Assembly (NCBI GenBank): GCA_022605425.2
Contig: CM061253.1
Span: 744,001 to 808,000, forward strand
Reading direction: 5' to 3'
From: Hamiltosporidium tvaerminnensis FI-OER-3-3
Taxonomy: Eukaryota > Fungi > Microsporidia
Length of the DNA: 64,000 bases
Part shown: positions 16,446 to 49,949 of the stretch, in pieces
Numbering within the stretch: the stretch's first letter is position 1
How the letters are laid out: the number at the start of each line of letters is the position of its first letter
Notes under the pieces: model-generated
Database searches by the model: none
Told to the model about the DNA's origin: nothing
Seen by the model: the letters and a program-made list of their open reading frames with translations, nothing else
Program-made: the position numbers and the translations under genes

Positions 16446-16878
16446 ACAGGGTTTTATTTTAAAGGAAATTCTTAATTTTTTACGAAGAAAAAAACTGCAT
16501 TGAAATTTTTATGAAACTTAAATTTACATTGAAAAATTTTTAATTTTGTTTACAAAAGAAAATCGGTTCTGTAATGTTTTTACTTTTCAGACTTTTTTTT
16601 TTTTATAAAAATCTAAATTTTCCAATGCAAAAGAAAAACCGGTTTTTAAACTAAATATCTATTAAAATTTTTATTTCATTTTTGACTTATTTGAATAAAA
16701 AAATATTTGTTGTTTCTAATTTAGAAATATTCGAATGAATCAAATACTACTCCTTCATGAATTAAATAAAATTACACTTGACTTGAGATTTTATTTATGG
16801 CTGAAAAAAGTATTAAAAATGCAAATTAATTCTTTGATATATGTCCTGGTTTAAAATAAATTCATTTTCCGGCTGAAA

Positions 16879-18820: not shown

Positions 18821-19054
18821 AGTCTGCTCTATGATGCGAAAATGGTTTTTATATTCAATCTCCAGTTTGATATGATTAAAATTCATTTTTAGCTTTTTCT
18901 TTACTTTATTTCATATTTCTTTTTTTGAATTTTAAATATTGCACCAGTTTTTATTTACTTCGTACGCTTGTATGTCTTGAAAATCTTAGTTTGTGATTTT
19001 TAGATTAAAAATATGCCTTTTTTTCTCATAATTTTTCTTTGTTAGTGCGCGATA

Positions 19055-19500
19055 TCTAGTTCAAGAAATTTTTAAAAATGAATATGTAGATATAAGAGTG
19101 GCCATCGGACTAAAAACTGATGTCAAAATTCGGAATAATAGATCCGAAATATTTATTTTGAATAAGACTAGAAAAAGGAAACTTAAATTGAAGTAGAATT
19201 ACTTCCCAAGTTTCCCTTCAAATTGAATAAACTAAAAAAATCGGAAAACATAAGGTTTTAACATTCTTTAAGTCTTATTTATAAGTATAGTCTTGAGATA
19301 ATCTTGTATATGATGAACCCGGATGGTATTGTAACAAAATTCCATAAGACGTATGGTAAAAAGTAATATTGCTGAATATAGAGGCATATATTCAGTTGAT
19401 TGTACTTAGAAAACAGTTTAGAGATTTCATATGATCAATGAAGAAGAATTGAGTCGGCCCAAATGCCGGAAAAGAGCAGTTATGGGTGTTATCGGAGACT
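19055..19500 (+). mobile_element. Relic of the restriction-like endonuclease (REL) domain of a non-LTR retrotransposon
   Basis: KNEYVDIRVAIGLKTDVKIRNNRSEIFILNK...IEV...EIILYMMNPDGIVTKFHK with stops and frameshifts; homologous to 41265-41550. Confidence 0.75.
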
Positions 19501-19928
19501 AGGTGAATGAGGAATCATCATAGCCTTTAAAACAAACGAGTAAAGAATAATATGGCGTTAAATATTTTTTTTAAAAAATAATAGCTCCTTATTTTATACT
19601 TAGAAGAACCATATAAAAGGAACTGCCAATAAAAATAAATGAAAATTCGATTCTGAAAAGTAAAAGACGATGGTACAAAAAGTAGAAGAAAATATATAAA
19701 ATTCTGGAAAGAATTTTAAAATCAAAATATATTCAATTGTATTTAGAGCATTAAAACATTTTTTTAACATATTTTTTACAAAACTAATATTTTTCGATAG
19801 CAAATAAATGCATCCAAATTTTTATTTTTTAAAAAATATATTTTTCATTAAAAAGCGAATGTAAATCTTTACTAACTGGCAATACAAATTATCTAAAAAT
19901 TTATACATAAAAAACCTCCCCTCTTTTT

Positions 19929-20792
19929 ATGGACGATCAAGCCTATTCGATGTTACCATATTTTTATGAAAATATATTTCCATTGGAAAGAATATTTCAA
20001 TGGTTAAAAATTGACGAGAAACGAGAAATATCTTTCACATTACAAAACGGCATGTATTTACGGTATTTAAATTTCAAATCAAAAGAAGAATTACTGACAA
20101 AGATTTTATCAACCGTTCCTGTCAAAATAGATTTTGGAGCTGTATATGCCAATAGACTAAGAAAAGGAACGGAATGTATTCCAGTGGAAAAAGAACTTGT
20201 CTTCGATATTGATTTGACAGATTATAAAAGAACATGTTGTACGGGAAGAAATACTTGTGAAACATGTTTTGTGTTGGTAAAATCTGCTATAAAATTGCTA
20301 AATTATTCTTTGAAAGAAGAATTTGGATTTGAAAAAGTACTTTTTGTATTTTCAGGAGGACGTGGTATACATTGTTGGGTATCGGATGACAATGCTCGTT
20401 CGTTAAATAATTCTGAACGTCAAAGTGTGACAAAATTTTTTGATTCGGTTTCTAAAAGAAAGATATTTCCAACGGAATATTGTAATATTTTGATGGAAAA
20501 TATTGCAGAGTTTAATGAACCAGATCTAAATATTAAACCCGAAACTGCCACAGTCGAAGAGATATTTGAACATTTATATATAAAACTTGATAAAAATGTT
20601 ACATCGGAGATTAAACACCTACTCAAATCTCCCTTCTGTGTTCATTCTTCTACAACCAAAGTATGCGTTCCCCTAGATCCTGAAAACATTGATACCGTTC
20701 TCATTGAACATCTTCCAACACTACAAAATGTCATGGATAATCCAAAAACATTGGATCCATACATTAGAATATTTGATCAAATATTTTTTTAA
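19929..20792 (+). CDS. PRI1: DNA primase small (catalytic) subunit
   Basis: REISF, KIDFGAVY, KELVFDIDLTDY, FSGGRGIHCWV, HLLKSPFCVH motifs. Confidence 0.97.
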   Translation: MDDQAYSMLPYFYENIFPLERIFQWLKIDEKREISFTLQNGMYLRYLNFKSKEELLTKILSTVPVKIDFGAVYANRLRKGTECIPVEKELVFDIDLTDYKRTCCTGRNTCETCFVLVKSAIKLLNYSLKEEFGFEKVLFVFSGGRGIHCWVSDDNARSLNNSERQSVTKFFDSVSKRKIFPTEYCNILMENIAEFNEPDLNIKPETATVEEIFEHLYIKLDKNVTSEIKHLLKSPFCVHSSTTKVCVPLDPENIDTVLIEHLPTLQNVMDNPKTLDPYIRIFDQIFF

Positions 20793-20869
20793 TTTTTTAC
20801 AAATAAATTAATATTTGTAATTATTTTTAAAATTAAAATTTAAACTTCTCAGTATTATATTAGATTGTA

Positions 20870-21580
20870 TTAATTTTAAAGGTTATTTTTTTAAAAATAG
20901 TAGGAAGTATTCAATTGTTTGCATGGAATTAACCCAGTCCTTGGGTTAATATAAGTAACTGCTTATTCAACACTTCATCGATACACCCTCCACGATATCC
21001 TAATCTTAACTCCCGCTCATTTAAAGAAAGAATAATGCAAAATTAATGTGCGAAATAATTGCCCCGAACTTTTTAATGTTCGTTGCATTGAGTAGTATTG
21101 TAATTCGAAACCCCTAATGAGCTCTTTCATTACATCAAGCATTTTCACTTACTCTACACTTTCTGATTCATATTTACTTCTAGCTAAGATATATTTAAAA
21201 GACTTACATGAGGCCCAAGTAGACAAAGCAATATCATACAAACAAATATAACCTGTTACTTAACTTCACGGGCTTTAGAGGGTTTATTTTTTATATATCC
21301 CAGTCGCTAAGCCTTCCAACTCGAGTGAGCAAGGTTAGGTTTCCATGTTTTTACAAAGCGATTCTTTACAGTTTGAATCGCGCTTTGTAATCTAGCTATA
21401 CATAAAAACCCAAAACTGCTCTGTAGAGAAGTTTTAACTGTACAGATTCGTATACATCAACGAAAATATAATTCACTTCTAATTCCACAAAAATATAAAC
21501 ATTGAATTTTGTTTCTAATTCAATCAACCTTTGTTAAACAAAAGATTTTTAACAAGCTTGTTCTTTCTGTATCATTCTAA
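20870..21580 (-). mobile_element. Diverged inverted copy of the SINE-like element
   Basis: Reverse complement contains TCAGAAAGTGTAGAGTAAGTG, CCTCATGTAAGTC, ATATATCTTAGCTAGAAG, CATGGAAACCTAACCTTGCTCACTCG. Confidence 0.85.
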
Positions 21581-22304
21581 AAAGAAATATTATAAAGTAG
21601 CATATTAACCCAAAACCAAATTGAAAATATTTTTATCAGTAAAAATTACTTAAATAAATATTATTTGAAATATCTTTTATAGTGTTTGTATATAATTATA
21701 CTTTTAATTTAAGCCATAATTATACAATACTTCTTAAAAAACACTTAAAACATTTATCTTTAAATCATAAAATACAGTTTAAAAGCCACAAATACTCAAT
21801 ACAAACCAGTATATAAGATAAGCAGCTTAGGTATACAATTAACACAATTGATACAATTAGAGATAAAAAAAATATTATAAGATTCATTTGAATATAATTT
21901 CTTAATAAGTATAAAAACAAAATAAATCCAAACAAGCAATAATAAAATATCAAGGATGAGTTTTTACAGAATTATAAAATGTTTGTAAAGAATATTTTTT
22001 AAATCAAAATAAAATTAAAAACGATATTCATGTGTCAGTTCTGTAAAATAATAGATTTTATTAAATAAACTAATATTTCTATAACTACTTGTAAATATAT
22101 AAAAACCAAGCGTATATTTAAAAAAAAAATTACCTTTTAAGGATACTAATTAAAGGTATGAAAATCACGAGTATATTTTATGAAATAAACTTGTCTTTCC
22201 ATAACCGCCAATCAAAAATATTTAAACCTTATCTAATCAATTTTAATTGGTTATTTTTCTTATCAAAAAGATATAAAATACAAAACCAGAAAAAAAATAA
22301 AAAA

Positions 22305-23225
22305 ATGTTACAAAAAAAAGTAAAATTAAACAACGGAAAAGAGATTCCTATAATAGGATTAGGTACATGGAGAATAAATGGTAAAGAATATATAAGAAAT
22401 TCCATTACATCTGCGTTAGAAATAGGATATAGACATATAGATACTGCATGGGTATATGAAAACGAACAAGATATAGGAATAATATTATCAGATATTCTAA
22501 AAAATAAAAAATTTAATATAAAACGAGAAGATCTGTTCATCACATCTAAGTTATGGAACACATTCCATCACAATGTTAAGGAAGGTGTGATACAGACCTT
22601 AAGACACCTAAAATTAGAATATTTAGATTTATATTTAGTGCATTGGCCAGTAAGTTTCAAAAGTAAAAATAATTACGAAACTGACCGAGATAAAGAAGGA
22701 AATCCGATTTTATTAGACTTTGATCCTGTGTCTGTATGGAAACAAATGGAAGAATTGGTGGAAAGCGGTCTCACAAAATCAATTGGTGTAGCTAATTTTG
22801 GAACACAAAATCTCACAAAAATACTGGAAAATTGCAGAATAAAACCCGTCATAAACCAGTTTGAATTACATCCTTACTTAAAACAAACCGATTTACAAAA
22901 TTTCTGTACAAATCACAACATTCAAATACAATCTTACTCGTCACTCGGATCTTCTGATAACGAAAACACCGCCCCGAATCTCAAAGAAGACCCCCTCTTG
23001 TCAAAATTAGCCCAAAATAGAAATATTACCACCTCACAACTCATACTCAGCTACTTAACTCACAAAAATATTTGTGTCATTCCCAAAAGCACCAACCCTA
23101 CCCATATCCACCAAAACTCTCAATTAATTCCACTCACAGACCAAGAAGTACAACAAATAGAAAGTATTAAAACAGAATACCGATACGTAGATCTTCCATC
23201 CTTCGGAAAAGACAGATTTAAATAA
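22305..23225 (+). CDS. Aldo/keto reductase (aldose reductase-like)
   Basis: IGLGTW, GYRHIDTAWVY, DLFITSKLW, YLDLYLVHWP, KSIGVANF, IPKS motifs. Start placed at Met50 (MLQKKVKLNNG) of the track ORF. Confidence 0.95.
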   Translation: MLQKKVKLNNGKEIPIIGLGTWRINGKEYIRNSITSALEIGYRHIDTAWVYENEQDIGIILSDILKNKKFNIKREDLFITSKLWNTFHHNVKEGVIQTLRHLKLEYLDLYLVHWPVSFKSKNNYETDRDKEGNPILLDFDPVSVWKQMEELVESGLTKSIGVANFGTQNLTKILENCRIKPVINQFELHPYLKQTDLQNFCTNHNIQIQSYSSLGSSDNENTAPNLKEDPLLSKLAQNRNITTSQLILSYLTHKNICVIPKSTNPTHIHQNSQLIPLTDQEVQQIESIKTEYRYVDLPSFGKDRFK

Positions 23226-23439
23226 AAAGCAATACAATTCTTATCCATATATTTTGTTCTTATATGTATAAATATTATTATATTTCTTATATATTTTATT
23301 ACATCTCTTACTATATTTCATATATCTCTATATTTTTTTTATTATTATATCTTACAAACTCTTTTATCTTCTAATGATATATCTTCTTTAAAAAAATTAT
23401 AATTCAACAAAACCTTCTTTCAGTTAAAAAAACAATAAT

Positions 23440-23960
23440 TTATATTTAAAACCCTCTTAATAGTATATCTGTTACTAAAATCTTCTTAATATTCTATACT
23501 GTGGGTAGAACTTCTTAATAATGTACACTGTTACCAATACCCTCTTATTTACTATCTTTATTTTAAACCCTTTTATTTACTACTCTTATTAAAAACCCCC
23601 TTATTTACACCTCTATGATTTACACCCCAATATTTACTATCCTATTAAAAACCCCCTTATTTACTACCATATTGATTAACACCCTCATATCTACTATCTG
23701 TATGATTTACACCCCAATATTTACTATCTCTATTAATAACACCCTCTTATTTAATACCAAATTAATAAAACCCCCTTGTTAATAACACCCGCTTATTTAC
23801 TACTCTTATTAATAACACCCTCATCATACACACTACTATCACTAAAACCCCCCCCCTCACCCACTATCCCTAACACCCCCCTCACCCTCACACTTACCCC
23901 CACTTCTCCCTCCATATTTCCCTCCAAATAACCTATAAAACAACACTCCCTTCTCTTCCT
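23440..23960. repeat. C-rich degenerate repeats (AACACCC / AAAACCCC ... TTTACTA) upstream of the cyclin gene
   Basis: Recurrent ACCC-TCTTATTTACTA-like units ending in a C-rich tract. Confidence 0.75.
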
Positions 23961-24581
23961 ATGAAAAGACTCTTCCAAGACATTACAAACGTAATAAAAA
24001 AGAACATAAAACTAACCATCCACAGAAACAACCACAGAAAGAAACTAATACAATGGTTATACGAAGTATGCACAGAATTCTCATACTCTCCCATAACATA
24101 CACTCTCTGTGTCCAAATACTAGACAAATACACTTCTCTAACCCCAATAAATTACAAAATATACCAATTAATAGGAATAACCTGTCTTTTTATATCCGCC
24201 AAAATAGAAGAATCCACTACAAAAGATATACACGAATATATAACAGTAACTGATAATTCAGTATCTTTACAACAAATTTTAAATACAGAAAAAGATATTC
24301 TTTGTAATTTAAATTTTAATTTATTTTTTATCTCACCACACTCATATATAAATATTTTTTATTTAGAAAATATTTCTTATAAATATAATATTTCAATAGA
24401 ACATACATCACACCTATTACATTGTTTTGTTGCTAGTGTTATGGAAAAAGAAGAAGTTAATATGTATTGGTTATATGAAGAAGCTAAGACACTATTTGAG
24501 AAGTGCTTAGAAAAAAAAGAAATTGATAAAGAAATAAGACTATATATACCGTTATATAACAAGGATATAATAAAAGGGTAG
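23961..24581 (+). CDS. Cyclin (N-terminal cyclin box)
   Basis: RKKLIQWLYEV, LDKY, YQLIGITCLFISAKIEE, ILNTEKDILCNLNFNL. Confidence 0.92.
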   Translation: MKRLFQDITNVIKKNIKLTIHRNNHRKKLIQWLYEVCTEFSYSPITYTLCVQILDKYTSLTPINYKIYQLIGITCLFISAKIEESTTKDIHEYITVTDNSVSLQQILNTEKDILCNLNFNLFFISPHSYINIFYLENISYKYNISIEHTSHLLHCFVASVMEKEEVNMYWLYEEAKTLFEKCLEKKEIDKEIRLYIPLYNKDIIKG

Positions 24582-24889
24582 ATAAGGTACTGTAAGGATA
24601 AAGATTATTAGTAGTATATTAGGGATTGATAGGATATAATAAAAGGGTAGATAAGGTACAGTAAGGATAAAGTATTATTAGTAGTATATTGGGAGAAGGA
24701 TATAAAAAAGGGAAAAAAAAAAAATTTTTTATTAGTATTATAAGGTTACTGTGATTAGTATTTATATTTGTATTTGTATCAAGGTTAGTATTAGAGTTAT
24801 ACATGAATTGGTGTTAGTGTTTATACTTACTTATTATTTAGATGGTTATTGGTATTAAAGGTTGTAAAGGGTAAATTATTTTACTGGTT

Positions 24890-26880
24890 CTACTAATTGT
24901 TAATTAACACCCTATTATTTTACTATACACTACTAATTCTTAATTAACACCTTATTATTACTATACACTACTAATTCTTAATTAACACCCTCTTATTTAC
25001 TAGTTCTACTACTTCTTAATTAACACCCTTTTATTTTACTAGTTATACTAATTGTTAATTAACACCCTCTTATTTACTAGTTATACTAATTGTTAATTAA
25101 CACCCTATTATTTTACTAGTTATACTAATTGTTAATTAACACCCTCTTATTTACTAGTTATACTAATTGTTAATTAACACCCTATTATTTTACTAGTTAT
25201 ACTAATTGTTAATTAACACCCTCTTATTTTACTAGTTATACTAATTGTTAATTAATACCCTATTATTACTATACACTACTACTTCTTAATTAACACCCTT
25301 TTATTTTACTAGTTATACTAATTGTTAATTAATACCCTATTATTACTATATACTACTAATTGTTAATTAATACCCTATTATTTTACTATACACTACTACT
25401 TCTTAATTAACACCCTCTTATTTTACTACCCCAGTATAAATATTTAATTAACACCCTTTATTTATTATACCCCAGTATAAATATTTAATTGATACCCCTA
25501 TTATTTTACTATACTTACTAAACAATAAATTAACACCCTCTTATTTTACTATACACTACTAATTCTTAATTAACACCCTCTTATTTTACTATACACTACT
25601 AATTCTTAATTAACACCCTCTTATTTACTAGTTCTACTAATTGTTAATTAACACCCTATTATTACTATACACTACTAATTGTTAATTAACACCCTATTAT
25701 TTTAGTGGTTCTACTAATTGTTAATTAACACCCTATTATTACTATACACTACTAATTGTTAATTAACACCCTATTATTTTACTACCCCTGTATAAATATT
25801 TAATTAACACCCTTTATTTATTATACCCCAGTATAAATATTTAATTGATACCCCTATTATTTTACTATACTTACTAAACAATAAATTAACACCCTATTAT
25901 TTTACTATACACTACTACTTCTTAATTAACACCCTCTTATTTTACTATACACTACTAATTCTTAATTAACACCCTCTTATTTACTAGTTCTACTAATTCT
26001 TAATTAACACCCTCTTATTTTACTATACACTACTAATTGTTAATTAACACCCTCTTATTTTACTATACACTACTAATTCTTAATTAACACCCCTTATTAT
26101 TACTATACACTACTAATTCTTAATTAACACCCTTTAATTACTATACACTACTAATTATTAATTAACACCCTCTTATTTACTAGTTCTACTACTTCTTAAT
26201 TAACACCCTTTTATTTTACTAGTTATACTAATTGTTAATTAATACCCTATTATTACTATACACTACTACTTCTTAATTAACACCCTTTTATTTTACTAGT
26301 TATACTAATTGTTAATTAATACCCTATTATTACTATACACTACTAATTGTTAATTAACACCCTATTATTTTACTATACACTACTAATTGTTAATTAACAC
26401 CCTATTATTTTACTAGTTATACTAATTGTTAATTAACACCCTATTATTACTATACACTACTAATTGTTAATTAACACCCCTGTTATTTACTATACTTACT
26501 AAACAATAAATTAACACATTTTAATTTACTATATTTACTAAACAATAAATTAACACCCTGTTATTTACTACCATATTTAAACAATAAATTATCACCCCTT
26601 TATCTACTATACCCCTGTATAAATATTTAATTAACACCCTGTTATTTACTACCATATTTAAACTATTAATTAACACCCCTTTATCTACTATACCCCAGTA
26701 TAAATATTTAATTAACACCCTTTATTTTACTACAATATTTAAACTATAAATTAACACCCCTTTATTTACTATACTTACTAAACAATAAATTAACACCCTT
26801 TTATTTTACTATCATACTAAACAATAAATTAACACCCTATTATTTTACTACCCCATATAAACTATAAATTAACACCCCCC
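24890..26880. repeat. ~2-kb minisatellite of ~40-bp variant units with core TTAATTAACACCC
   Basis: Dozens of units like TACTATACACTACTAATTCTTAATTAACACCCTCTTATTT, with higher-order duplicated blocks. Confidence 0.95.
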
Positions 26881-26927
26881 TCTTTATACTACCACCCTAC
26901 ATTCTTTACCCCTTAAATACAATATTT

Positions 26928-27140
26928 ATGAACATCAAAAGTAAATATGAACAAGAAATATCCAAAATATTAGGTAAAGCCATGCAAAGCAGTTACCAAA
27001 AAAATAAAATACAACAACTTATTACCACTGCAATAGAAAAAACCAATATTTTAATAGAAAATAAAGAAATTGATATTTATGAAATTAAAAATGAATTTAA
27101 AAAGATAAAAGAAGAAATTGAAAGAGAAATTATAATGTAA
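26928..27140 (+). CDS. Small hypothetical coiled-coil protein (70 aa)
   Basis: Non-repetitive ORF between two repeat arrays, CCCC upstream, E/K-rich helical composition. Confidence 0.55.
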   Translation: MNIKSKYEQEISKILGKAMQSSYQKNKIQQLITTAIEKTNILIENKEIDIYEIKNEFKKIKEEIEREIIM

Positions 27141-27590
27141 GAGTAAGGGTTAGTGATAGTGATAGTGATAGTTGTAGTGATAGTGATAGTTGTAAGATAA
27201 AAAGAGAAATTATAATGTAAGAGTAAGGGTTAGTTGTAGTTGTAAGATATTAAGGGGTGTTAAGGATAATAATTATATTAAAAGGTTATAATAACAACTA
27301 CTAGTAAATAAGATGTGTTAAATATCCTAATGATATTAAAAGGGTTATAATAACAACTACTATTAAATAAAAGGGTTAACAACAAAGATAGTAAATAAGA
27401 TGTGTTAATAACTACTAGTAAATAAGATGTGTTAAATATCCTAATGATATTAAAAGGGTTATAATAAAAGTACTGGTAAATAAGATGTGTTAACAACAAA
27501 GATAGTAAATAAGATGTGTTAATAACTACTAGTAAATAAGAAGGGTTAAATATCCTAATGATATTAAAAGGGTTATAACAATAATACTTA
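27141..27590. repeat. G-rich degenerate repeats (GATGTGTTAA / AAAGGGTTA)
   Basis: Repeated TAGTAAATAAGATGTGTTAA and ATATTAAAAGGGTTATAA blocks. Confidence 0.8.
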
Positions 27591-27699
27591 TAAACAATAA
27601 CTTAACAACAACACTTATAATTAAAACAAATAGAAAATATTAAATATTCCTTCTTTAATAATATTTATTATAAATTAAGACCAACAAGGTATAATATAT

Positions 27700-27965
27700 G
27701 TCTATATTCTTATATTCTTATATTCTTATATTCTTATATTCTTATATTCTTATATTCTTATATTCTTATATTCTTATATTCTTATATTCTTATATTCTTA
27801 TATTCTTATATTCTTATATTCTTATATTCTTATATTCATATGTCTTATATGTCTTATATTCTTATATGTCTTATATTCTTATATGTCTTATATTCTTATA
27901 TGTCTTATATTCTTATATTCTTATATGTCTTATATGTCTTATATTCTTATATAATATAATCTTAT
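27700..27965. repeat. 8-bp microsatellite (TATTCTTA)n with TATGTCTTA variants
   Basis: Directly visible tandem array. Confidence 0.95.
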
Positions 27966-28065
27966 ATCCCTATTAATCATACTATCTATCCCTAATCCCT
28001 ATCTAAAACTATATCCCTCTTTATCCACTACCACACTCCATCCCCACACTCCACTACCCCCCCCT

Positions 28066-31000
28066 TTACAAATACAATGAACTTGCAAATACTATATCCC
28101 TCTTTATCTTACTAACACCTAAACTAAATATACCTTCTAACTCACTATTACCAATACCTCTAGCAGCACAACTAAGCTGTCTCATTAACTCTTCTAACCT
28201 TCTAAAACACCTAATAATACTTCCTTCAAATACATTAGTCTTACAACATATCTCACTAAAAGTAAACCCTAACACCCACATCCTAACAACATCCATTAAT
28301 TCATAAGAAAACCTTTTATAATAACACTGTATATCAACATATAACCCACATTCACTCATAACCTTAGATATCTTATCAACTGTACCTTTTAAAAGTCTAT
28401 ACGTTTTATTATTTTGTTCACTAAGTTCTAAATCATTATTTTCTTCCCATTCACTAAATACCATACAAGATAATAAAGGTACTATCTCATCAACACCTAA
28501 ACTTATAAAATCTCCATTAAATATCATTTCTGTTAATATTAATTCATCACTACTACTTATTTCACATGCTACTCTTCCTTTTACTAATACTTTATTGTTT
28601 ATATCACAATATTCTAATCTTCTTAAAACACTTATCATTTTCTTACAATCCTCCATATGATATATCTCATTTAAAGAATTTAAAGTATTATATTTCCTTA
28701 TAATAAGGTTTTTAGAATAAAGGAGTCTAAAGTGTTTAAGGGGTGTGGGTGTGGTATTAGTGGGGGTGTTATTGGTGTTGGGGGATGTGGGTGTGTATAT
28801 GTTGTTGTTATTGGTATTACTTCTTTTATTAGTGTTAGTGGTATTACTAGTTTTATTAGTGTTAGTGTTATCATATCTATTACTATCCCTAACCCTCTAC
28901 TACTATCCAACACACTATCCATACTGTCATACTCTGCTATTGGGTCGTAACATATACCCTCTATACACTTACTTACTATATATTCTCTACCACATAAATA
29001 ACACCCTTTACTAATACTATCATATCCTTTACTCTCATATCTATTAATACCTTTACTAATACTATCATATCCTTTACTCTCATATCCTTTACTCTCATAT
29101 CCTTTACTCTCATATCCTTTACTCTCATATCCTTTACTCTCATATCCTTTACTATCATACCCTTTACTTATACTCTCATATCTTTTACTCTCATATCCTT
29201 TACTCTCATATCCTTTACTTATACTCTCAATCTCACTTTCACTCTCATACCCTTTACTCTCAATCCCACTCTCAATCTCACTTTCTATTTCATATATTTT
29301 ATAATCATATTCACTTTTAATATTAATAAAAGGTATTTTATTATTTTCTTTAAAAATAAAATCTTCTTTTACTCTTATATCATAAATATTGTTTATGCAT
29401 GTTTTATTTATTTGCATTCTTTTTATACCCCCACGCATAAAAGCATGAACAGATAAGGTGTTAGTATTAGTATTAGTATTATGGTTAGGGTTGTTGTTAC
29501 TTATAGGGTTAGAGTTACTTATAGGGTTAGTGTTATTACTTATAGGGTTAGTAATAAGGTTATTATTAACCTACCCTTACCACTATCCCTACCCTTACCC
29601 CTACTACTATCACCCCCTGTTATTATTATTGCATTGATAAATAGGGTTGCTCCTTCTCTTGGTATAAATATATTTAATAATCTACCTACTTTTAAATAAG
29701 GTTTAAATACTTCTTGTAAACTAACACTTCTCTCTATTAACAGTCTCTCTCTCTCAAGACAAAGAAGAGGGAGTTGGTTAATAATAGTAGTATTTGGTTG
29801 GTTGTTACTGTTATTAGTATTGTTATTTAGTTGGTTGTTAGTATTGTTGTTAGTAGTATTGTTATTATGTATGTTACTATCCCTACTACTAACACTACCA
29901 CTATCCCCACTACCACTATCCCCACTACCACTATCCCCACTACCACACTCCCCACTACCACACCCCCCACTACCACTACCACTACCCCCACCACACTCAT
30001 ACTCATACTTATCTATAATGTGTCTTATCTTCTTTATCTCTTTAAATACCTCTTCTCTCTTATATATATTTTGAAAATGATAAAAACTTCTTCCTAAAAG
30101 AAATAAAGGATCTAATCCTTCTACTCTCATAAGATTTAACACCATATTATAACTAAGATAAAAAGCACTATCTAACCTATCACATACACCACTAAATAAT
30201 TTAACACCTTCTTCTTCTTCTATAGTATCACCTAACATAACAATAACAATTCCTTTATCATCTAAACCTCTTCTACCTGCTCTACCACTCATTTGTATAT
30301 ATTCACCACTACTAAGTATTCTTTTTAAAATACCATCAAATTTATATAAAGAAGTAAAAATAACAGTCTTTGCTGGCATATTTAAACCAATAGAAAAGGT
30401 TTCAGTTGCAAATAAAATTTTTAAAAGATTTTCTTGAAATAATATTTCTATAACTTCTTTAAGTATAGGAAGTAAACCACTATGATGTATACCTATACCT
30501 TTCATAAGTAATGGTAATATGTTTGTTATTAATGGTAGGTTTCTATCTTCTGTTCTTAAAGTACTTAAAGCATTTGAGAAAATTATTTTTATCATTTTTT
30601 TTTCTTCTGAATTTAAAAAGTCTTGTTCTATGCTTAAAGCGTGTTTTTCACAGTCTTTTCTACTGAAACTGAAGAAAATTGCGGGTAAATTGTTATTTTG
30701 TATAAGGGTTTCTGTAATTTGAAATATATTTTTACTTTCAATTCTTTTACTTCTTTTAATAGATTTAACAACAGAGGTAAATGCTTTACGGTCAAAGAAG
30801 GTGTTATTATTTGTAGGGGTAGTGGTGGTAGTGGTGGTAGGGTGGGTGTTTTGGTTGTTGGAGGGGTGTTGTTTATTAGATAGGTTGTTAACACCCTGTT
30901 GTTTATTAGATAGGTTGTTAACACCTTGTTGTTTATTAGATAGGTTGTTAACACCCTGTTGTTTATTGGTACTGGTGTTAACACCCTGTTGTTTATTAGA

Positions 31001-32164
31001 TAGGTTGTTAACACCCTGTTGTTTATTGGTACTGGTGTTAACACCCTGTTGTTTACTATCTGTATCAATAACACCCTTATAACTACTATCTCTGTCAATA
31101 TCACCCTTATAATTACTATCCTTATAATTAACACCCTGTTGTTTACTACCTGTATCAATATCACCCTTATAATCACACACCTTACTATCAATATCACCCT
31201 TATAATCACACACCTTACTATCAATAACACCCTTACTGTCAATATCACCCTCATACCCCACACCCTTACTATCACTATCACAATCTACGTTATAACATAC
31301 CTTTGTCATTCCTTTCTCTCCTAATGGTGCTATATAATGAATTAAAGGTGTTGGTCTCTTATCTGTATAAATAACATGTGTTGTCTGTTGATGTATATAC
31401 GTTATCCACTCAGCAAACTGTAAAGCATTAGGAACAGTAGCACTAAGAAATACCATTCTAACACTACAAGGTAATAAAACAATACTCTCTTCCCATACAA
31501 CACCTCTCTCTTTATCTTTCATATAATGTATCTCATCAAATATAATATACTTTACTTCTCTTAATATCTCACTACCTTTATATAACATATTACGTAATAT
31601 CTCTGTTGTCATTACTATACATGAAGATGAAGGGTTAAGTGTTACATCTCCTGTCATTAATCCTACATCATTAAATTTTTCAAGTAATTCTCTGTATTTT
31701 TGATTTGATAATGCTTTTATAGGTGATGTGTATATAACACGTTGGTTGTTACTTATACATGTGTGTATAGCATGTTCTGCTACTAAAGTCTTACCAGAAG
31801 AAGTATGTGCACTAACAAGGACACTTTCGTTTCTTTCAATAGCGTTAATTGCTAGTAATTGGAATGTGTCTAATTTAAAGGGGTATATCTTAGAAGGGGG
31901 TGTTAGTGTAAGAGGTATGTATGTAGTAGAGAGGGGTGTTACAGCTAAGTGTCTAGTATGTTGATAAGTAGTAACACATGATATCTTAGTATTTGTGATT
32001 GGTGTATTTGTAATATTTGTGTTTGTATTTGATATAGTGTTTGGTATAGTGTTTGTATTTGGTATAAGTGTCATATTATAAGTGTTATAAGCGTCATTTG
32101 TGTTACTAGTGTTAGTTATGGTGTTGAAGACTGAGAATGGATCATCGGGGTTTTCAAATGACAT
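28066..32164 (-). CDS. MTR4: Ski2-like exosome RNA helicase Mtr4/Dob1, with several low-complexity inserts and two apparent frameshifts (~29570, ~28895)
   Basis: SAHTSSGKT, YTSPIKALSNQK, DEIH, SAT, QMSGRAGRRG in 29540-32164; DSHCT domain (KGRVACEI...EGSIIR...IKRDIVFASSLYL) in 28066-28656; three ORFs join via two -1 shifts. Confidence 0.9.
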
Positions 32165-32169
32165 GGGTG

Positions 32170-33010
32170 TTAAGGGTAAGGAGGTGTTTTATAATAAAGA
32201 GGGGAGAGAGGTAAGAGGGTGATAAGTAAAAGGAGTAGAAGTAAGAGGGTGTTAAGGATAAGGAGTAGTATGTAAGAGGGTGTTAAGTATAAGGAGTAGT
32301 ATGTAAGAGGGTGTTAAGTATAAGGAGTAGTATGTAAGAGGGTGATAAGTATAGTACTTTAAATAACCCGTTAGTAACAGTATTTTTAAATAACCCGTTA
32401 GTAATAGTATTTTTAAATAACCCGTTAGTAATAGTATTTTTAAATAACCAGTTAGTAATAGTACTTGTAAATAACAATAGGGTGTTAACACCTTGTTAAA
32501 AATAACACTAACAATAACAGTCTCTTATTAATTATCTTGTTAGTAACATAACTTATAAATAACCTTGTTGAAATATCACTAACAATAACAGTCTCTTATA
32601 AATTATCTTGTTAGTAACATAACTTATAAATAACACTAATAATAACCCTAATAATAACCTTTAATTAACTCATTACTAACCTATTAAAGTATTACTAAGC
32701 TAGTAGCAATCCTTACTTATCAATAATCTTAACCTAACCCTAACTCTTTACTAACTTTTACAAACAATACTCCTACCACATATACTTAATACAAATTCTA
32801 CTTAATAATCCATCTAATCCTACATATTCCTAACCTATTCCTATACCTATTCCTATACCTATACTGACTTATTATTATTCCTAATTCTAGTTTCTCTGAT
32901 ATTTTCCCTACAACCTATTCATAACCCTACCCTACCACCTATCCTTAACCTTTCCCTACCATCAGTTCTTAATCCAACCCTACATTCACCTACCCAATAA
33001 CCTTAATCCT
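32170..33010. repeat. G-rich (GAGGGTGTTAAG) then C-rich (TAACCC / CCTA) repeats between MTR4 and the next gene
   Basis: Tandem ~30-bp AGTATGTAAGAGGGTGTTAAG and ~27-bp TTTAAATAACCCGTTAGTAATAG units. Confidence 0.8.
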
Positions 33011-33014
33011 AATC

Positions 33015-33860
33015 CTACTTGTAATCTGCCCACAGTTCCTCTTCATTAGAGTAATCCTCTGTAGGAAACACTCTAAATCCATCTCCATGTGCTTTTAAGA
33101 AATAAGTGTCATCATTCGGATCATGTATCTTAAGTTTAGCACCTGGTTTAAGTATATATTCTTCTGTACCAAGGTGTCTTACAGACTTTAAGTCTCTAAT
33201 ATATTCTCCATATACAGTTTCACTGTTACTAATACAATTATCTGTGTATCTACACAGTTCACTATTAAAAGAGGTATTAACAGTACCCATGTCTTTATAT
33301 TTGACACGAGAAATCATTCTGAATATAGAATCGTAAATTGAAGTCTTAAGTTGATGTATTTCTCCAAAAGTAAATCCTATGATGTTATCGCATGTACCAA
33401 ATGGTAATATGGATGTCTGTGGAGGTGTCATAAGTAAATTGGGACAGAAAAATACTAAAAGTCTATTTCCAAGCTGTCCTTTTTCTTTGGCTTGTATAAA
33501 TGTACGGGACATGGCTGATCGGGCTTGTGAAGGAGATCCTTCCATACACTTGGTTTTGTCGTAGGGTACTTTGTAATCGTCTAAAGATAAATTGTCGAAG
33601 TATCCTCGTACTTGTACACCGTACGGTTGAAGGTCGCGGTTTACCATGTCAAAAATACCGCCGTAAAATTTCATGTTGGCGGTTATTACGTTATAGTCCA
33701 TGCTAAATTCTGGGTTGAGCATAGATTTTAGGGCTATCATGGCTCCTCCGTCGATATGGACGTGTATCTTTATTACGTTGGTGCCTCTTTTGTTTGCACA
33801 ATTTCTTATCATTCCCATTTCTTTTTGTAGAAAAATTGGAAAAAATAGAAAGAAAAGCAT
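33015..33860 (-). CDS. Secreted microsporidian protein, possibly spore wall protein 7-like
   Basis: Signal peptide MLFFLFFPIFL; IRNCA..G.NVIKIHV motif and Cys spacing resemble the SWP7 family as I recall it (unverified). Confidence 0.6.
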   Translation of the reverse strand: MLFFLFFPIFLQKEMGMIRNCANKRGTNVIKIHVHIDGGAMIALKSMLNPEFSMDYNVITANMKFYGGIFDMVNRDLQPYGVQVRGYFDNLSLDDYKVPYDKTKCMEGSPSQARSAMSRTFIQAKEKGQLGNRLLVFFCPNLLMTPPQTSILPFGTCDNIIGFTFGEIHQLKTSIYDSIFRMISRVKYKDMGTVNTSFNSELCRYTDNCISNSETVYGEYIRDLKSVRHLGTEEYILKPGAKLKIHDPNDDTYFLKAHGDGFRVFPTEDYSNEEELWADYK

Positions 33861-35050: not shown

Positions 35051-37614
35051 AAGATTCAATAAGAATCATATGTAATATTATTTTTGTTATCACGAATTCT
35101 TATTTTTAGAAAGTCAGAGAGTTAAAATGGCAAGACAAGCAATAAATTATATTAAATACAGGAACCAATAAAATACACTGCTAGATTACACTCTTTCTAT
35201 ATATTTTATTGGCTTTTCACTTATATCTTTTAAATTATAAATTCTTTTTTGATTTCAAAAGAAAGCTTTCAATTGAAAAAGTTTATTTATTAAAAGATTG
35301 ATATTTTAACAGTGGCTGATCAATACTTCTTTAGTTGTTTGTGTTGTTTTTTTAGGAATTTTGTGTTTTATTGTTATACCTTGTATATTCTTATAATTTT
35401 TTTTGCCTTTGGCTATGAATCAGCACATCTGAAAATTTGAATAACCCATAAATTTGGCAGTTTTTATATAATTAGTGTTTTTATTTTCATTATGGCTTAA
35501 TGATACTGTTCAGCTAAATCAAAAATTGTTATTGCAAATTTTTTTTTTTAATATAAGTTTAAACAATTTCTGGCAAAATCAATAGAAAAAAGTTATCTTT
35601 TTTTCTTAACTGATTCCTATATTGAATATTAGAGTTTTAATACTAGAAACAAATCATATATCAAAGTTTCATTTCAATTGCTTCAGATTTTTATTTGAAA
35701 TTATAGTAAGTTTTAAAATTTGTAATTGTAAAATATGATTTTTCTATTTTTTAGTTCTATAACTACTTTTTATAAGCTTTAAAAAGTACACATGTGTTAG
35801 AAATCACAAATATTCAAATAATACAAATAAAAAATCTTTTACTACTGTATTTTAGACTTCTATTATAGAAATATCAACTATTGTTTTACATTGAATTACA
35901 AAATACTAAGAGTGTTTCAAAATGTTTTATATGCCTATATATAGTTTATTATCTTTATCATATATACATTTACTTCAAATAAATAATCGGGTTTTCTGGG
36001 TTCTATATCAATATACATGCTATTTAAAGAAATTGGTTATTTATATGAGTGTTTTTTTTAAAGCCACTAGTTTTTTTTCGGTTTTTTAGCTTCTAATTAT
36101 AGATATTTGAGAATTCTATTTTAATTTAACAATGCAAGAAGAAATCTAATAACTTAAACAAAAAAAATTATCTTTGAGCTCAATTTACATTTGGTTCCAA
36201 TTTATAACGCATTTATATTTGATATCGTATATTATTTATCAAATATGGATTTATGTAAATAATAACTTTATATGTTTACACATGATATAATATTATATAG
36301 TTTCTCTTCTAGATATTTACATGTATATAAATAACTATGTGTCTTAGATCGAATCATATTTCCAAAAGACTAATTAACATGTATAGTATTTCTAAATTAC
36401 ATCGGATTTTCTCACGAAGTGCTTTTTTAAAATCTGTTCATATGAATATTTATTTCATGAATTATATAAAATACTCTTCTTGGTAAATTTAAAATTTCTT
36501 AAATATTGATTGCAATAAAAAAAAATCAACTTCTTAGTCTGGAGTTTGAATATAATTTTACTTTAGTTTAAGAAATTTAATAAAATTTTTAAATAGAAAA
36601 TATTCTTGGATTTATAAAAAAATCGTTATAAAACATAAATAGACTTTTATAATATTAGTTGAAATGAAAGTTTTTAAAATAATTATTTTTTTTAAAATTC
36701 TAAAGATTATCGATATTAAAAAAAATTGATAGAACTATAATAACCTTATTATTTTGTAATTAATTTACTTTTCATTTTTAAAAATATTTTTTTTATAATA
36801 TTTTGGTATATTTGTGCTTCAAAGTTAAATTCAAATTATAAAAAGTTAAAAATTTGACTTTTTGCTTATCAGTCGCTATATATTAGCTTTATAAAAAGAA
36901 CTTTTAAGATATTTTAGATTTAAAATGGTTGAAAATAAACTTAGAAAAGTAGAATTAAAGATTTTCATGGTATATTGATAAAAAAAAATAACAACTTATT
37001 AAATTTTTATCAATATTGAGAGCTATAAAGTTTCTAAGACTTATAATTTTACACACGGTTGATATTTGCAACTTTTATCAGAAAAAATCTTATTTATCAG
37101 CTTTTGGTTATAACAATATTTCTTTTTGAATAAAATAATAATTCACTTGTGGTTTTCTAAAAGATATATTTGATGATTTTTCATTGTGTTATAATTAAAC
37201 CTGATTGTAATATAATTTGAAGTATAGCTTGCTAGATTATATATTTACAATTCAAATAATTTTTTTTAGGATTTTGTAAGAATATTCATACAGATTACAA
37301 AATCCTCTTTAGGAAAATAATTAAAATTTTGGCTTGAATCGAGTATCAGGTAAATAAAAATATGATATACATTTCGGTTGAAATTTATATTTGTATTTAA
37401 AATATCAATGTATTATAAATAATTTCTTTAGCAAATTAGCAGCAAACATATTGATAAAATATGTATTGTTCTTGTTCCTTGGTAGCTTTAAATGTAATAG
37501 AATAAATTAAAGAATATAAAAAAATTCCAAATAACGTCAAATTATATATAGAATAGTCAATGCCTAAGAAAATCGATATTTTACAATATAAAAATCAAAT
37601 TCCATTCCCATAAA

Positions 37615-38841
37615 ATGAATTTAATATGTTTTTGGTTTATTCGAGGTTTATATTTTTTGGAGGTTCTTTACGCAGCACTTATACCGTTTTCTAATACAAA
37701 CGGTCGAAAGAAAATAGAAGAAACCTATTTACACTTTTTAAGTTGCAGAATATATAAATATTATTCATATACTGATATAGAATATCTTTCAAGTGGTGGA
37801 TATGGCCATATATTAAAAGCTACATATATTGCGACTAGAGAAACCGTGGTAATTAAAGTAGCAAAATCAAATGAATATCAAATTTCTCTTACAAATGAAA
37901 AGAGTTTTTTGGATAAATTGAATCATCTAAATATTATAAAATATATTCGGGAAATAAAAATTAATAATAAAACATGTTTGGTATTTCCATTCTATGAAAA
38001 TACCTTAGAATCAGCATTTTTACATAAATTTTTTGATGACAATGAAATAAGATTTATACTTAAACAAATTTTAGATGCTTTAAGGTATATGCATAATAAA
38101 GGAATAATACACAACGATATCAAACCCGGAAATGTTTTACTCCAAGGCAAAGGATGTGTTAAAATTATAGACTTTGGTATAAGCTGTAACGTAAATAGGC
38201 CAATAAAAATATTTGAAGGTTATGGTAAAAGCGATATCGATCAGAAATTTGAATTCTATTCACCTGAAATTAGAACAAATGATCTATATAACGAAAAAAG
38301 CGATATGTGGAGTTTTGGATATATAATTAGGTATTTAAAGTACAAAAATAAATGGAAATCGATATACGAATTGGCATTTAAAGTTCAAGATTATTCTCAT
38401 TTTATTTCATTTTTTATAAATAATGAATCCGATAAAAGAGTAAGTGCATCAACTGCACTCATGAGTAACTTTTTTGAAGGTTTTTATGAATTTATTTTTT
38501 GTTTTTGTTCAATTAAAGACCAATCTATTTGCGGACCAGAATATAAATTTTCCAAATTTGATAATAGACTTCATATTACCAATAACAAATTAAATATTGT
38601 GTTTTATTGTGGTTGTAGTGTTGAAGCGAAAAGTTTTTGCTCTGAAAAAATAATTCAAGCCAAGAGAAAAGATATGGTATTTTTTAACTCAGATCATTCG
38701 CAATATTTTAGTTTTGGAAACCACTGCAGTTTTATGATAATAATTGACACTCGTTTTTATTTATTATGCGAATTAAATATGAGCGAATTGGAATGTTTAC
38801 AAGTGATTTTTCAATATCTTAGGATTAACACTATGAAATAG
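37615..38841 (+). CDS. Ser/Thr protein kinase paralog 1, putative signal peptide
   Basis: SSGGYG, VVIK, HNDIKPGN, DFG, YSPE, DMWSFG; hydrophobic N-terminus; Cys-containing C-terminal domain. Confidence 0.92.
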   Translation: MNLICFWFIRGLYFLEVLYAALIPFSNTNGRKKIEETYLHFLSCRIYKYYSYTDIEYLSSGGYGHILKATYIATRETVVIKVAKSNEYQISLTNEKSFLDKLNHLNIIKYIREIKINNKTCLVFPFYENTLESAFLHKFFDDNEIRFILKQILDALRYMHNKGIIHNDIKPGNVLLQGKGCVKIIDFGISCNVNRPIKIFEGYGKSDIDQKFEFYSPEIRTNDLYNEKSDMWSFGYIIRYLKYKNKWKSIYELAFKVQDYSHFISFFINNESDKRVSASTALMSNFFEGFYEFIFCFCSIKDQSICGPEYKFSKFDNRLHITNNKLNIVFYCGCSVEAKSFCSEKIIQAKRKDMVFFNSDHSQYFSFGNHCSFMIIIDTRFYLLCELNMSELECLQVIFQYLRINTMK

Positions 38842-49765: not shown

Positions 49766-49949
49766 TCAATATTTTATAAATACTTAGAAAATATTTTATT
49801 TACTAAGTTTCCGATTGCAAACTCATTTTAAAACAATTATATATTTTTTTCTACTTCCTAAACCACTAACTTTTATGATGTAAATATAAAATAATCATTT
49901 ATATTTATCTACAGTTCTTGTTGTGTAATTTGTTCCTCTATTAAAGAAT

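What the first reader, a model, noticed from the sequence alone, without database searches (positions are those of the whole stretch)
23440..33010. 10-kb island of polarised repeats: expansions run G-rich then C-rich around a GGGTGTTAA/TTAACACCC core
Seen: at least seven G-rich to C-rich switches on the + strand, at about 24880, 27590, 28875, 29570, 29878, 30885 and 32360. They occur in spacers and inside the MTR4 CDS alike. The same core motif flips orientation across switches (GGGTGTTAA before, TTAACACCC after), and skew drifts back from C to G across conserved coding segments. The rest of the window lacks this pattern. Established: G-strand then C-strand is the geometry of head-to-head telomere-like fusions or fold-backs. 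Inference: a locus-specific, strand-polarised expansion process (addition of G-rich repeats to both broken 3' ends followed by rejoining, or bidirectional slippage from fixed points), or selection for arrays of a DNA-binding site. This could be an undescribed genome-expansion mechanism.
Basis: partly seen in the sequence, partly recalled or inferred. Interest (0 to 1): 0.8.

Follow-up and report, generated by a model that had tools for sequence, protein, structure and literature searches.

The report
Strand-polar repeat inserts in microsporidian genes
A 10-kb stretch of a microsporidian (Hamiltosporidium) chromosome, like many others in this genome, carries repeat blocks that always read G-rich then C-rich, sit in frame inside essential genes and are flanked by a matching one-strand mutation bias in conserved codons. 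This looks like the footprint of recurrent DNA breaks, not of telomere-like additions, and I found no published description of it.

Summary
The 64-kb window has no comparable skew outside 22.99-33.02 kb. All 54 exact copies of the 9-mer core lie in the island, oriented with the local skew. It is not an assembly artefact: an independent assembly of another isolate and short-read contigs from four studies bridge the junctions.

The genome statistics fit Hamiltosporidium tvaerminnensis. The true telomere repeat, TTAGGG, is not enriched in the arms.

The core belongs to a dispersed minisatellite family:
- Units are about 30 nt (10 codons).
- GGGTGTTAA occurs 2,667 times against 90 for the reversed word.
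- The family forms head-to-head G-array/C-array pairs in spacers and in frame in MTR4, and in RPB2-like, SNF2, GCP, PRP8 and TAF2 genes at other loci.

The skew also reaches synonymous sites of conserved domains. The pattern there is C-to-T plus A-to-G on the G-rich strand, so inserted repeats alone cannot explain it.

Best reading (about 0.4): the switch points are recurrent break sites, 5'-to-3' resection exposes one strand on each side, and repair expands the repeats.

Main rival (about 0.25): a palindromic selfish element whose polarity is inherited.

The telomerase-like model is unlikely. Four literature searches found no description.

The parts
22991..33018 (.). The skew island: alternating G-less and C-less domains of 50 to 2,000 nt. 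The left border lies inside the AKR coding sequence (about 22,850-22,990). The right border is at the 3' end of ORF 33,015-33,860.
   Evidence: HMM segmentation; composition profiles
22158..23225 (+). Aldo-keto reductase gene. Its last ~120 codons are G-poor (third-position G:C 3:35) with no insert at the point where the skew begins.
   Evidence: Pfam PF00248; codon-position counts
23226..23960 (+). C-rich spacer upstream of the cyclin gene, with 30/57/87-nt repeats carrying AACACCC-type cores.
23961..24581 (+). Cyclin gene. The 5' two-thirds are C-rich and the 3' third G-rich, with the C-to-G flip at 24,420/24,424.
   Evidence: Pfam PF00134
24424..24887 (+). G arm. It includes 69-nt repeats at 24,561-24,712. 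The H. magnivora contig L043 has about 240 nt more here.
24887..24890 (.). G-to-C switch 1 (spacer). L043 lacks 54 nt at 24,882.
24890..26920 (+). C arm: about 50 copies of a 38-40-nt unit (TTAATTAACACCC...) organised as a higher-order repeat. G:C is 48:432.
   Evidence: TRF
26928..27140 (+). 70-aa ORF with no family match, lying on a C-to-G flip.
27057..27590 (+). G arm with 6-, 18-, 59- and 114-nt repeats carrying GTGTTAA-type and GGGTTA cores.
27590..27702 (.). G-to-C switch 2 (a broad zone between convergent genes).
27703..27967 (+). (TATATTCT)n microsatellite at the start of the next C domain. It is 161 nt shorter in isolate L021.
28066..32164 (-). MTR4/DOB1 helicase gene (DEAD, Helicase_C, DSHCT domains) with five lineage-specific inserts. 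In this assembly it reads as three ORFs: 32,164-29,540, 29,438-28,698 and 28,656-28,066. The cause is a missing 64 nt at 28,895 and a missing 1 nt at 29,569 relative to the intact ORF of L021.
28066..28656 (-). Conserved DSHCT domain encoded almost without C on the coding strand (third-position G:C 34:1).
   Evidence: Pfam 2.5e-49
28867..28872 (.). G-to-C switch 3, inside an MTR4 insert. The arms match in composition but not in sequence (fold z = +0.7).
29015..29285 (-). 15-nt (5-codon) repeat encoding SKGYE, with no C on the coding strand.
29559..29570 (.). G-to-C switch 4, inside MTR4 insert 3, at the site of the 1-nt difference.
29873..29877 (.). G-to-C switch 5, in MTR4 insert 2 (about 29,795-30,016).
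30797..31321 (-). MTR4 insert 1 (about 170 codons). It has three parts: a segment G-rich on the + strand (30,797-30,887), 30/60-nt units with the near-palindromic core GGTTGTTAACACCC (30,892-31,062), and a segment C-rich on the + strand (31,066-31,321). It contains switch 6. Read depth here is 40-100 times single copy.
31855..32354 (+). Segment G-rich on the + strand. It covers the low-complexity N-terminus of MTR4 and its 5' flank, with 31-nt GGGTGTTAAG units. On the minus strand TTAACACCC directly abuts the MTR4 ATG.
32354..32618 (.). G-to-C switch 7 (broad). It contains the exact palindrome GGGTGTTAACACC at 32,480.
32618..33018 (+). Last C arm, with 12/24-nt repeats, ending at the stop codon of ORF 33,015-33,860.

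Best explanation
The island is one of many in this genome, which fits Hamiltosporidium tvaerminnensis.

Two things are shown.

(1) A dispersed minisatellite family always occurs as a head-to-head pair.
- The consensus unit is about 30 nt (10 codons): GGGTGTTA[AG]T[AG]ATAGTA..ATAAACAACA.
- Copies in G orientation are followed directly by copies in C orientation.
- The pairs lie in spacers and, in frame, inside large housekeeping genes.
- Copy number differs between lineages.

(2) A strand-specific substitution bias extends from these arms into conserved coding sequence. At synonymous sites the G-rich strand has lost C to T and gained G from A.

Inferred mechanism:
- The G-to-C switch points are recurrent DNA break sites.
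- 5'-to-3' resection leaves the top strand single-stranded on the left of a break and the bottom strand single-stranded on the right.
- Deamination-type damage of exposed C and A makes each 3'-ending strand C-poor and G-rich. On one strand this reads as G-rich then C-rich, whatever the orientation of the gene.
- Repair synthesis, slippage or copying from other arrays at the break expands the repeats. In coding sequence only changes in multiples of three survive.

The repeats are not telomeric.
For: Real and inherited:
- The same skew pattern is present in an independent assembly of another isolate.
- The AKR-cyclin region of the two H. magnivora contigs is about 97-98% identical to the window.
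- Logan contigs of four studies bridge switches 3, 4, 5 and the G side of switch 6.

Family and polarity:
- GGGTGTTAA occurs 2,667 times against 90 for the reversed word.
- A 22-nt word recurs on at least 12 contigs against 0 for the control.
- Twelve other loci all show G arrays abutting C arrays.
- Neighbouring-motif spacing has a median of 38 nt for G-to-C against 202 nt for C-to-G, p = 4e-5.
- Abrupt G-to-C junctions number 18 against 7 abrupt C-to-G junctions. Only the G-to-C arms share inverted similarity.
- G arms and C arms share one unit consensus.

Bias in conserved codons:
- DSHCT third positions have G:C 34:1.
- In conserved blocks with a G-rich coding strand, NNY codons end in C in 1/94 cases and NNR codons in G in 34%. 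Neutral genes of the window give 20% and 14%.
- In blocks with a C-rich coding strand, NNY ends in C in 50% and NNR in G in 5%.
- Pfam domains of six other island genes give 7/156 and 48% against 25% and 20%.
- Amino-acid composition shifts the same way.

Polarity rule: bidirectional 5'-to-3' resection with damage to single-stranded DNA gives mutated C on the left and mutated G on the right of a break (PMC6786661).

Instability at the switches: the largest differences between lineages (161, 64 and 54 nt) lie at switch points.
Against: - No break has been observed. The mechanism rests on composition only.
- The bias does not decay smoothly with distance. The C domain over DSHCT keeps full strength for about 1 kb, then flips within 8 nt only 200 nt from the next switch.
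- The left edge of the island (about 22,850-22,990, inside AKR) goes from neutral to C-rich with no G arm and no insert.
- Non-coding arms are purine-rich (A at least equal to T on the G-rich strand). Simple C-to-T decay predicts T-rich arms. G+C is not lowered.
- Only 10 substitutions could be polarised among five lineages, and they show no clear bias.
- Exact core motifs are not significantly denser near the switch than far from it (77 against 61, p = 0.11).
- Indels lie within 85 nt of a switch zone in 9 of 19 cases against 29% expected. This is my own count, roughly p = 0.07.
- Nothing explains why the switches cluster in islands beside neutral core genes such as primase and TAF7.
Confidence: 0.4

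Rival explanations
1. A selfish palindromic element, foldback-like or in the manner of Rickettsia palindromic elements. Its two arms are tandem sub-repeats. Because it is a palindrome with a G-rich left arm, it reads G then C in either orientation, so the polarity is inherited rather than produced by a process. It spreads by transposition or ectopic conversion and survives in genes only when in frame.
For: - The family is dispersed and shares one unit consensus in both arms.
- Inverted similarity is found only across G-to-C junctions.
- One junction folds as a long hairpin, z = -4.0.
- Exact palindromic centres GGTGTTAACACC occur at some junctions.
- Unit lengths are multiples of three.
- Read depth over the 30-nt units is 40-100 times single copy.
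Against: - It does not explain the strand bias at synonymous sites of conserved domains.
- No defined termini or target-site duplications were seen.
- No insert is present in one lineage and absent in another. Only copy number changes.
- Some junctions have arms that match only in composition, z = +0.7.
- The full palindrome is rare, with 5 sites in the genome.
- The skew starts inside AKR without any insert.
Confidence: 0.25
2. G-rich repeats are added to both 3' ends of a break by a telomerase-like or other templated activity, and the ends then rejoin head to head, for example through the self-complementary GTTAAC.
For: - The geometry fits.
- Some junctions are exactly GGGTGTTAACACC(C).
- The same unit recurs at many loci, as a common template would give.
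Against: - The telomere repeat is TTAGGG. Its permutations are not enriched in the arms (13 against a mean of 10 for same-composition words).
- Units vary (24-40 nt, many variants), unlike the product of a fixed template.
- It cannot produce skew at homologous conserved codons.
- Exact palindromic junctions are rare.
Confidence: 0.08
3. Selection or transcription. One version: the arrays are binding sites or expanded promoter-type C-rich signals (TTAACACCC abuts the MTR4 ATG), with mirrored sites on the 3' side. Another version: R-loops on G-rich transcripts expose the non-template strand.
For: - Short C-rich words precede the ATG of neutral genes too.
- 5' flanks are C-rich and 3' flanks G-rich in the sense direction for every island gene in this window except the AKR 3' flank.
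- G-rich domains on the coding strand are the longer class in 9 of 11 genes examined (my count).
Against: - The skew alternates several times within one transcription unit (MTR4). No single direction of transcription explains it.
- The pattern is symmetric under reverse complement, so it carries no information about gene orientation.
- Neutral neighbouring genes lack it.
- No factor is known.
Confidence: 0.1
4. Replication-associated skew, with C-to-G flips as origins and G-to-C switches as termini.
For: The sign of the skew would fit exposure of the lagging-strand template.
Against: - It would need origins every 0.3-2.7 kb, and only inside islands.
- It offers no link to repeat expansion.
Confidence: 0.03
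5. An assembly or polishing artefact.
For: The reference has two frame-breaking differences at the junctions.
Against: - The same structure is found in four independent Illumina assemblies: the MTR4 part in L021, the AKR-cyclin part in L043-L046.
- It is also found in contigs of runs from four studies.
Confidence: 0.01

Closest known systems
Strand-switching mutation clusters around double-strand breaks ('5'C to 3'G single-switch' clusters in yeast; PMC6786661)
   Same: Same polarity: the top strand is affected on the left of a point and the bottom strand on the right. Same kilobase scale. The bases affected on the exposed strand include C.
   Different: Those are single somatic events of a few mutations made with an added deaminase or damaging agent. 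Here the pattern is saturated, inherited, shared by lineages, repeated every 0.3-2.7 kb and tied to repeat arrays.
Strand asymmetry of vertebrate mitochondrial DNA (C-to-T and A-to-G on the strand left single-stranded during replication; from my own knowledge)
   Same: The same pair of transitions on one strand, visible at synonymous sites.
   Different: That case has one polarity per genome, set by replication. This one is nuclear and alternates many times within a gene.
Rickettsia palindromic elements and yeast mitochondrial GC clusters (selfish palindromic repeats, some inserted in frame in genes; from my own knowledge)
   Same: A dispersed repeat with inverted symmetry, tolerated in frame inside conserved proteins of a reduced, AT-rich genome.
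   Different: Those are short single units with defined ends. Here the inserts are arrays of variable copy number with diffuse ends, and the conserved flanks are skewed too.
Foldback transposons (long inverted arms made of tandem sub-repeats; from my own knowledge)
   Same: Two inverted arms, each a tandem array of short units, with variable arm lengths.
   Different: No termini, target-site duplications, transposase or insertion polymorphism were found. The inserts are in frame in essential genes.
Head-to-head telomere fusions and interstitial telomeric repeats
   Same: The G strand is followed by the C strand.
   Different: The unit is not the telomere repeat TTAGGG, and conserved codons share the skew.
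Low-complexity inserts in conserved proteins of AT-rich parasites such as Plasmodium (from my own knowledge)
   Same: Lineage-specific, length-polymorphic, in-frame inserts in housekeeping proteins.
   Different: Those inserts have no two-part G-then-C structure and no dispersed unit shared with spacers.

Membership tests
Telomere-derived repeats (head-to-head fusion or interstitial telomeric sequence) | The unit is the organism's telomere repeat or a close variant. | tested here: not met
   Long (TTAGGG)n arrays exist in this genome (PMC10542269). In the arms TTAGGG occurs 13 times against a mean of 10 for words of the same composition. The top 8-mer is GGGTGTTA at 81 times expectation.
Telomere-derived repeats (head-to-head fusion or interstitial telomeric sequence) | The skew is confined to the added repeats. 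| tested here: not met
   Synonymous sites of conserved domains carry the same skew.
Foldback or MITE-type transposon | Two inverted arms of related sequence. | tested here: inconclusive
   Met at motif-rich junctions (hairpin z = -4.0). Not met at others (z = +0.7).
Foldback or MITE-type transposon | Defined termini with target-site duplication, and presence/absence polymorphism of the insert. | tested here: not met
   The outer ends are diffuse. Across the lineages compared (window against L021 for the MTR4 part; window against L043-L046 for the AKR-cyclin part), only copy-number changes and small indels are seen. The comparison is limited to this island.
Foldback or MITE-type transposon | Many dispersed copies. 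| tested here: met
   2,667 core copies; a 22-nt word on at least 12 contigs.
Minisatellite | Tandem units of 10-100 nt whose copy number varies between individuals. | tested here: met
   TRF arrays of 15-114 nt. Differences of 9, 33, 54, 64 and about 240 nt between lineages.
Break-centred single-strand damage footprint | C affected on the top strand to the left of a point and on the bottom strand to the right. | tested here: met
   C is depleted on the + strand left of each switch and on the - strand right of it, including at synonymous sites. The rule is taken from PMC6786661.
Break-centred single-strand damage footprint | Breaks actually occur at the switch points. | not testable with these tools
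   Only indirect evidence: the largest indels between lineages lie at switches.
Break-centred single-strand damage footprint | The bias falls off with distance from the break. | tested here: inconclusive
   Within MTR4, third-position G+C and skew are highest next to the arms and low in the middle of conserved blocks. The DSHCT domain, however, is uniformly skewed over 600 nt with an abrupt flip.
Spliced or eliminated sequence (intron-like or IES-like) | The insert is removed, so it need not keep the reading frame. | tested here: not met
   Reading frames stay open through the inserts for 700-1,000 codons in AT-rich DNA. Indels in coding arrays are multiples of three apart from the two frame-breaking ones. 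The genome paper reports only 17 confirmed introns with a mean length of 28 nt.

The most novel reading that the evidence does not exclude
Hamiltosporidium has an undescribed, possibly still active process of break and repair, or of an element that provokes breaks. It writes strand-polar minisatellites into spacers and in frame into essential genes. It leaves kilobase-scale resection footprints fixed in the germ line, so that recombination or fragility hotspots can be read directly from the base composition of a eukaryotic nuclear genome.
Probability: 0.35. Interest if true: 0.85.

Novelty: new variant of a known kind. Interest (0 to 1): 0.75.

Why it matters
If the reading holds, three things follow.
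- Local composition in this genome records where DNA breaks recur and how far resection runs. No microsporidian has such a map.
- It would give a concrete mechanism for genome and protein expansion in a large-genome microsporidium, a question the genome papers leave open.
- It shows how far essential proteins (MTR4, RPB2-like, PRP8, SNF2) tolerate long two-part low-complexity inserts.

There are also practical consequences.
- The arrays are length-polymorphic markers for isolates.
- The reference assembly breaks reading frames at these junctions, so gene models in islands need checking.
- The bias distorts codon usage and amino-acid composition, which affects phylogenetic and selection analyses of these genes.

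Tried and rejected
- **Telomere origin.** Rejected.
- **Assembly chimera.** Rejected.
- **'Islands are simply the core genes'.** Rejected. Primase and TAF7 next door are neutral.
- **One island per chromosome, centromere-like.** Rejected. The listed part of contig 1 already shows at least seven motif clusters.
- **Transcription-coupled asymmetry.** Rejected as sole cause, because the skew alternates within one gene.
- **Mutation spectrum from singleton variants in the 2-kb array.** Too few variants; the array is too homogeneous.
- **Polarising substitutions with five Hamiltosporidium lineages.** Only 10 usable sites in skewed DNA, uninformative.
- **Growth from the junction (core motif denser near the switch).** Not significant.
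- **Genome-wide junction counts by G-less/C-less run patterns.** A local trial showed the approach is insensitive and confounded by AT-only runs.
- **Further genome sampling.** Genome-wide statements therefore rest on 264 kb of contig 8, twelve 3-kb loci chosen by motif, and pattern counts.
- **Skew in a more distant relative.** A relative with a 1,174-aa MTR4 (L022) shows no skew.

Full report
**Identity of the genome.** The window is G000:C8:744,001-808,000 of a 21,638,905-base, 17-contig assembly. Size, contig number and 26.6% G+C match the published Hamiltosporidium tvaerminnensis assembly, whose telomere repeat is TTAGGG (PMC10542269). The nearest database proteins are named H. tvaerminnensis and H. 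magnivora. Long (TTAGGG)n arrays are present.

**Check of the observation.**
- Composition profiles and a three-state HMM on the G/C letters show strongly skewed domains only between 22,991 and 33,018, apart from one 166-nt segment.
- The seven G-to-C switches lie at 24,887/24,890, 27,285-27,702, 28,867/28,872, 29,559/29,570, 29,873/29,877, 30,887-31,066 and 32,354-32,618.
- All 54 exact copies of the 9-mer core in the window lie in the island, oriented with the local skew.
- C-to-G changes are often as sharp as G-to-C changes, so 'square wave' describes the profile better than 'saw-tooth'.

**Genes.**
- The island holds the 3' third of an aldo-keto reductase gene, a cyclin gene, a 70-codon ORF and MTR4 on the minus strand.
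- Against nine orthologs, MTR4 has five lineage-specific inserts. Every G-to-C switch within the gene lies in or at the edge of an insert. The C-to-G changes lie in or at the edge of conserved blocks.
- Because a G-then-C block is its own reverse complement in composition, the same polarity appears whatever the gene's orientation.

**Not an artefact.**
- Contig L021, from an Illumina assembly of another isolate, shows the same domains.
- The window differs from L021 by 0.8% in neutral parts, 2.1% in C domains and 4.7% in G domains.
- Indels are confined to repeats and are mostly multiples of three within the coding sequence.
- Logan contigs from four studies bridge switches 3, 4 and 5 and the G side of switch 6.
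- H. magnivora contigs carry the same AKR-cyclin region, with about 240 nt more of the 69-nt repeat and 54 nt less at switch 1.

**MTR4 frameshifts.**
- The two frameshifts that split MTR4 into three ORFs here correspond to a missing 64 nt at 28,895 and a missing 1 nt at 29,569 relative to L021, whose ORF is intact (1,345 codons).
- Contigs from other runs carry +1 nt over 29,274-29,807 and -2 nt over 28,064-29,034, which would restore the frame.
- The gene is therefore probably intact, and the reference is probably wrong or polymorphic at these junctions.

**A genome-wide repeat family.**
- GGGTGTTAA occurs 2,667 times against 90 for the reversed word.
- A 22-nt word occurs on at least 12 contigs with no control hits.
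- Twelve 3-kb loci fetched around such words, on seven other contigs, are all islands in which arrays of GGGTGTT are followed directly by arrays of AACACCC.
- Neighbouring motifs of opposite orientation are a median of 38 nt apart in the G-to-C order and 202 nt in the C-to-G order (p = 4e-5).
- Same-orientation spacing is mostly 30 nt, followed by 39, 27 and 60 nt.
- G arms and C arms share one consensus unit.
- Open frames of 700-1,000 codons run through these arrays in genes for an RPB2-like subunit, an SNF2 helicase, a gamma-tubulin complex protein, PRP8, TAF2 and a second DSHCT helicase.
- Read depth over the 30-nt units in MTR4 is 40-100 times single copy.
- Telomere-type hexamers are not enriched.
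- In 264 kb of contig 8, skewed domains cover about 5%, and this is the largest island.

**The skew is not only in inserted DNA.**
- Third codon positions of conserved domains follow the local domain. DSHCT has G:C 34:1, the last 100 AKR codons 3:35 and the first 100 cyclin codons 4:29. Within MTR4 the sign alternates along the gene.
- The table gives synonymous-site usage in conserved blocks only.

| Class of block | NNY ending in C | NNR ending in G |
|---|---|---|
| Coding strand G-rich, this window | 1/94 | 34% |
| Coding strand C-rich, this window | 50% | 5% |
| Neutral genes, this window | 20% | 14% |
| Coding strand G-rich, Pfam domains of six other island genes | 7/156 | 48% |
| Neutral state, same six genes | 25% | 20% |

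- Leu, Arg and Ser codon families and amino-acid composition shift the same way.
- In every class this amounts to C-to-T and A-to-G on the strand that ends up G-rich.
- Neighbouring core genes (primase, TAF7) are neutral, so this is a regional property, not a property of conserved genes.

**Mechanism.**
- Adding repeats, by any route, cannot change homologous conserved codons. A strand-specific substitution process is required.
- The pair C-to-T plus A-to-G on one strand is the asymmetry expected from deamination of single-stranded DNA.
- The polarity (the + strand affected left of a point, the - strand right of it) is the one shown experimentally for bidirectional 5'-to-3' resection at a double-strand break (PMC6786661).
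- I therefore propose that the G-to-C switches are recurrent break sites, and that the same repair events expand the arrays.
- Some arrays could provoke breaks themselves. One junction folds into a long hairpin (z = -4.0), but another does not (z = +0.7).
- The three largest indels between lineages lie at switches.
- This is inference, with several misfits:
  - The bias does not decay smoothly.
  - The left border of the island has no G arm.
  - Non-coding arms are purine-rich rather than T-rich.
  - The few polarisable substitutions show no bias.
  - Motif integrity is not significantly higher near the junction.

**Rivals.**
- A palindromic selfish element whose polarity is inherited explains the family and its symmetry. 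It does not explain the conserved-codon bias, and no termini or empty sites were seen.
It fails on the repeat sequence, the variability of the units and the conserved codons.
- Binding-site, promoter or R-loop readings cannot account for several sign changes within one transcription unit.
- Replication would need origins every kilobase or two.

**Novelty.** Full-text searches for GC skew or strand asymmetry in microsporidia, and the two Hamiltosporidium genome papers, mention nothing of the kind. Each ingredient is known: minisatellites, in-frame selfish repeats, resection-linked strand bias. Their combination as a fixed, genome-wide, kilobase-scale pattern in a nuclear genome is not known to me.

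**Limits.**
Generality rests on 264 kb, twelve motif-selected loci and pattern counts.
- RNA was not examined.
- First-stage notes by other readers on this genome report the same pattern in RPA1, ValRS, a P5A-ATPase and Sec27. I used them as leads only.

Noticed in passing
window 28,895 and 29,569: The reference assembly breaks MTR4 into three ORFs. Another isolate (L021) has an intact 1,345-codon ORF, and contigs of other runs carry compensating +1 and -2 nt. These are probably reference errors or polymorphism at repeat junctions, so gene models in such islands may be broken in the same way.
   Followed up: partly
L021:5651-5725: The database protein P0002 (1,361 aa) skips the true stop codon (...ASSLYL*) through a 21-nt 'intron' and adds a spurious 16-residue tail.
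   Followed up: yes
window 27,703-27,967: The (TATATTCT)n microsatellite of about 33 copies is 161 nt shorter in isolate L021.
   Followed up: partly
window 37,615-54,661: Three paralogous protein-kinase genes of about 410-430 aa (Pkinase, DUF5898) lie in tandem in compositionally neutral DNA.
   Followed up: no
window 57,814-58,255 and 9,722-10,117: Tandem repeats of 87 nt (5 copies, 98% alike) and 68 nt (6 copies) lie outside the island. The 87-nt array shows no strong skew; the 68-nt array includes a 300-nt stretch with skew below -0.5 (9,801-10,100).
   Followed up: no
L022 (Logan contig of SRR31913119): An unidentified microsporidian relative has a 1,174-aa MTR4 with its own inserts but no G/C skew domains, so the phenomenon is specific to this lineage.
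   Followed up: partly
window 16,446-16,460, 19,905-19,928, 37,600-37,614: Short C-rich words (AACCCTGT, CCTCCCCTC, CCATTCCC) lie just upstream of the ATG of neutral genes. The island's C arms may be expansions of this kind of signal.
   Followed up: no
window 18,300-25,600 against L043-L046: In this region the contigs labelled H. magnivora and H. tvaerminnensis differ by only 1-3% and do not separate cleanly by species label.
   Followed up: no
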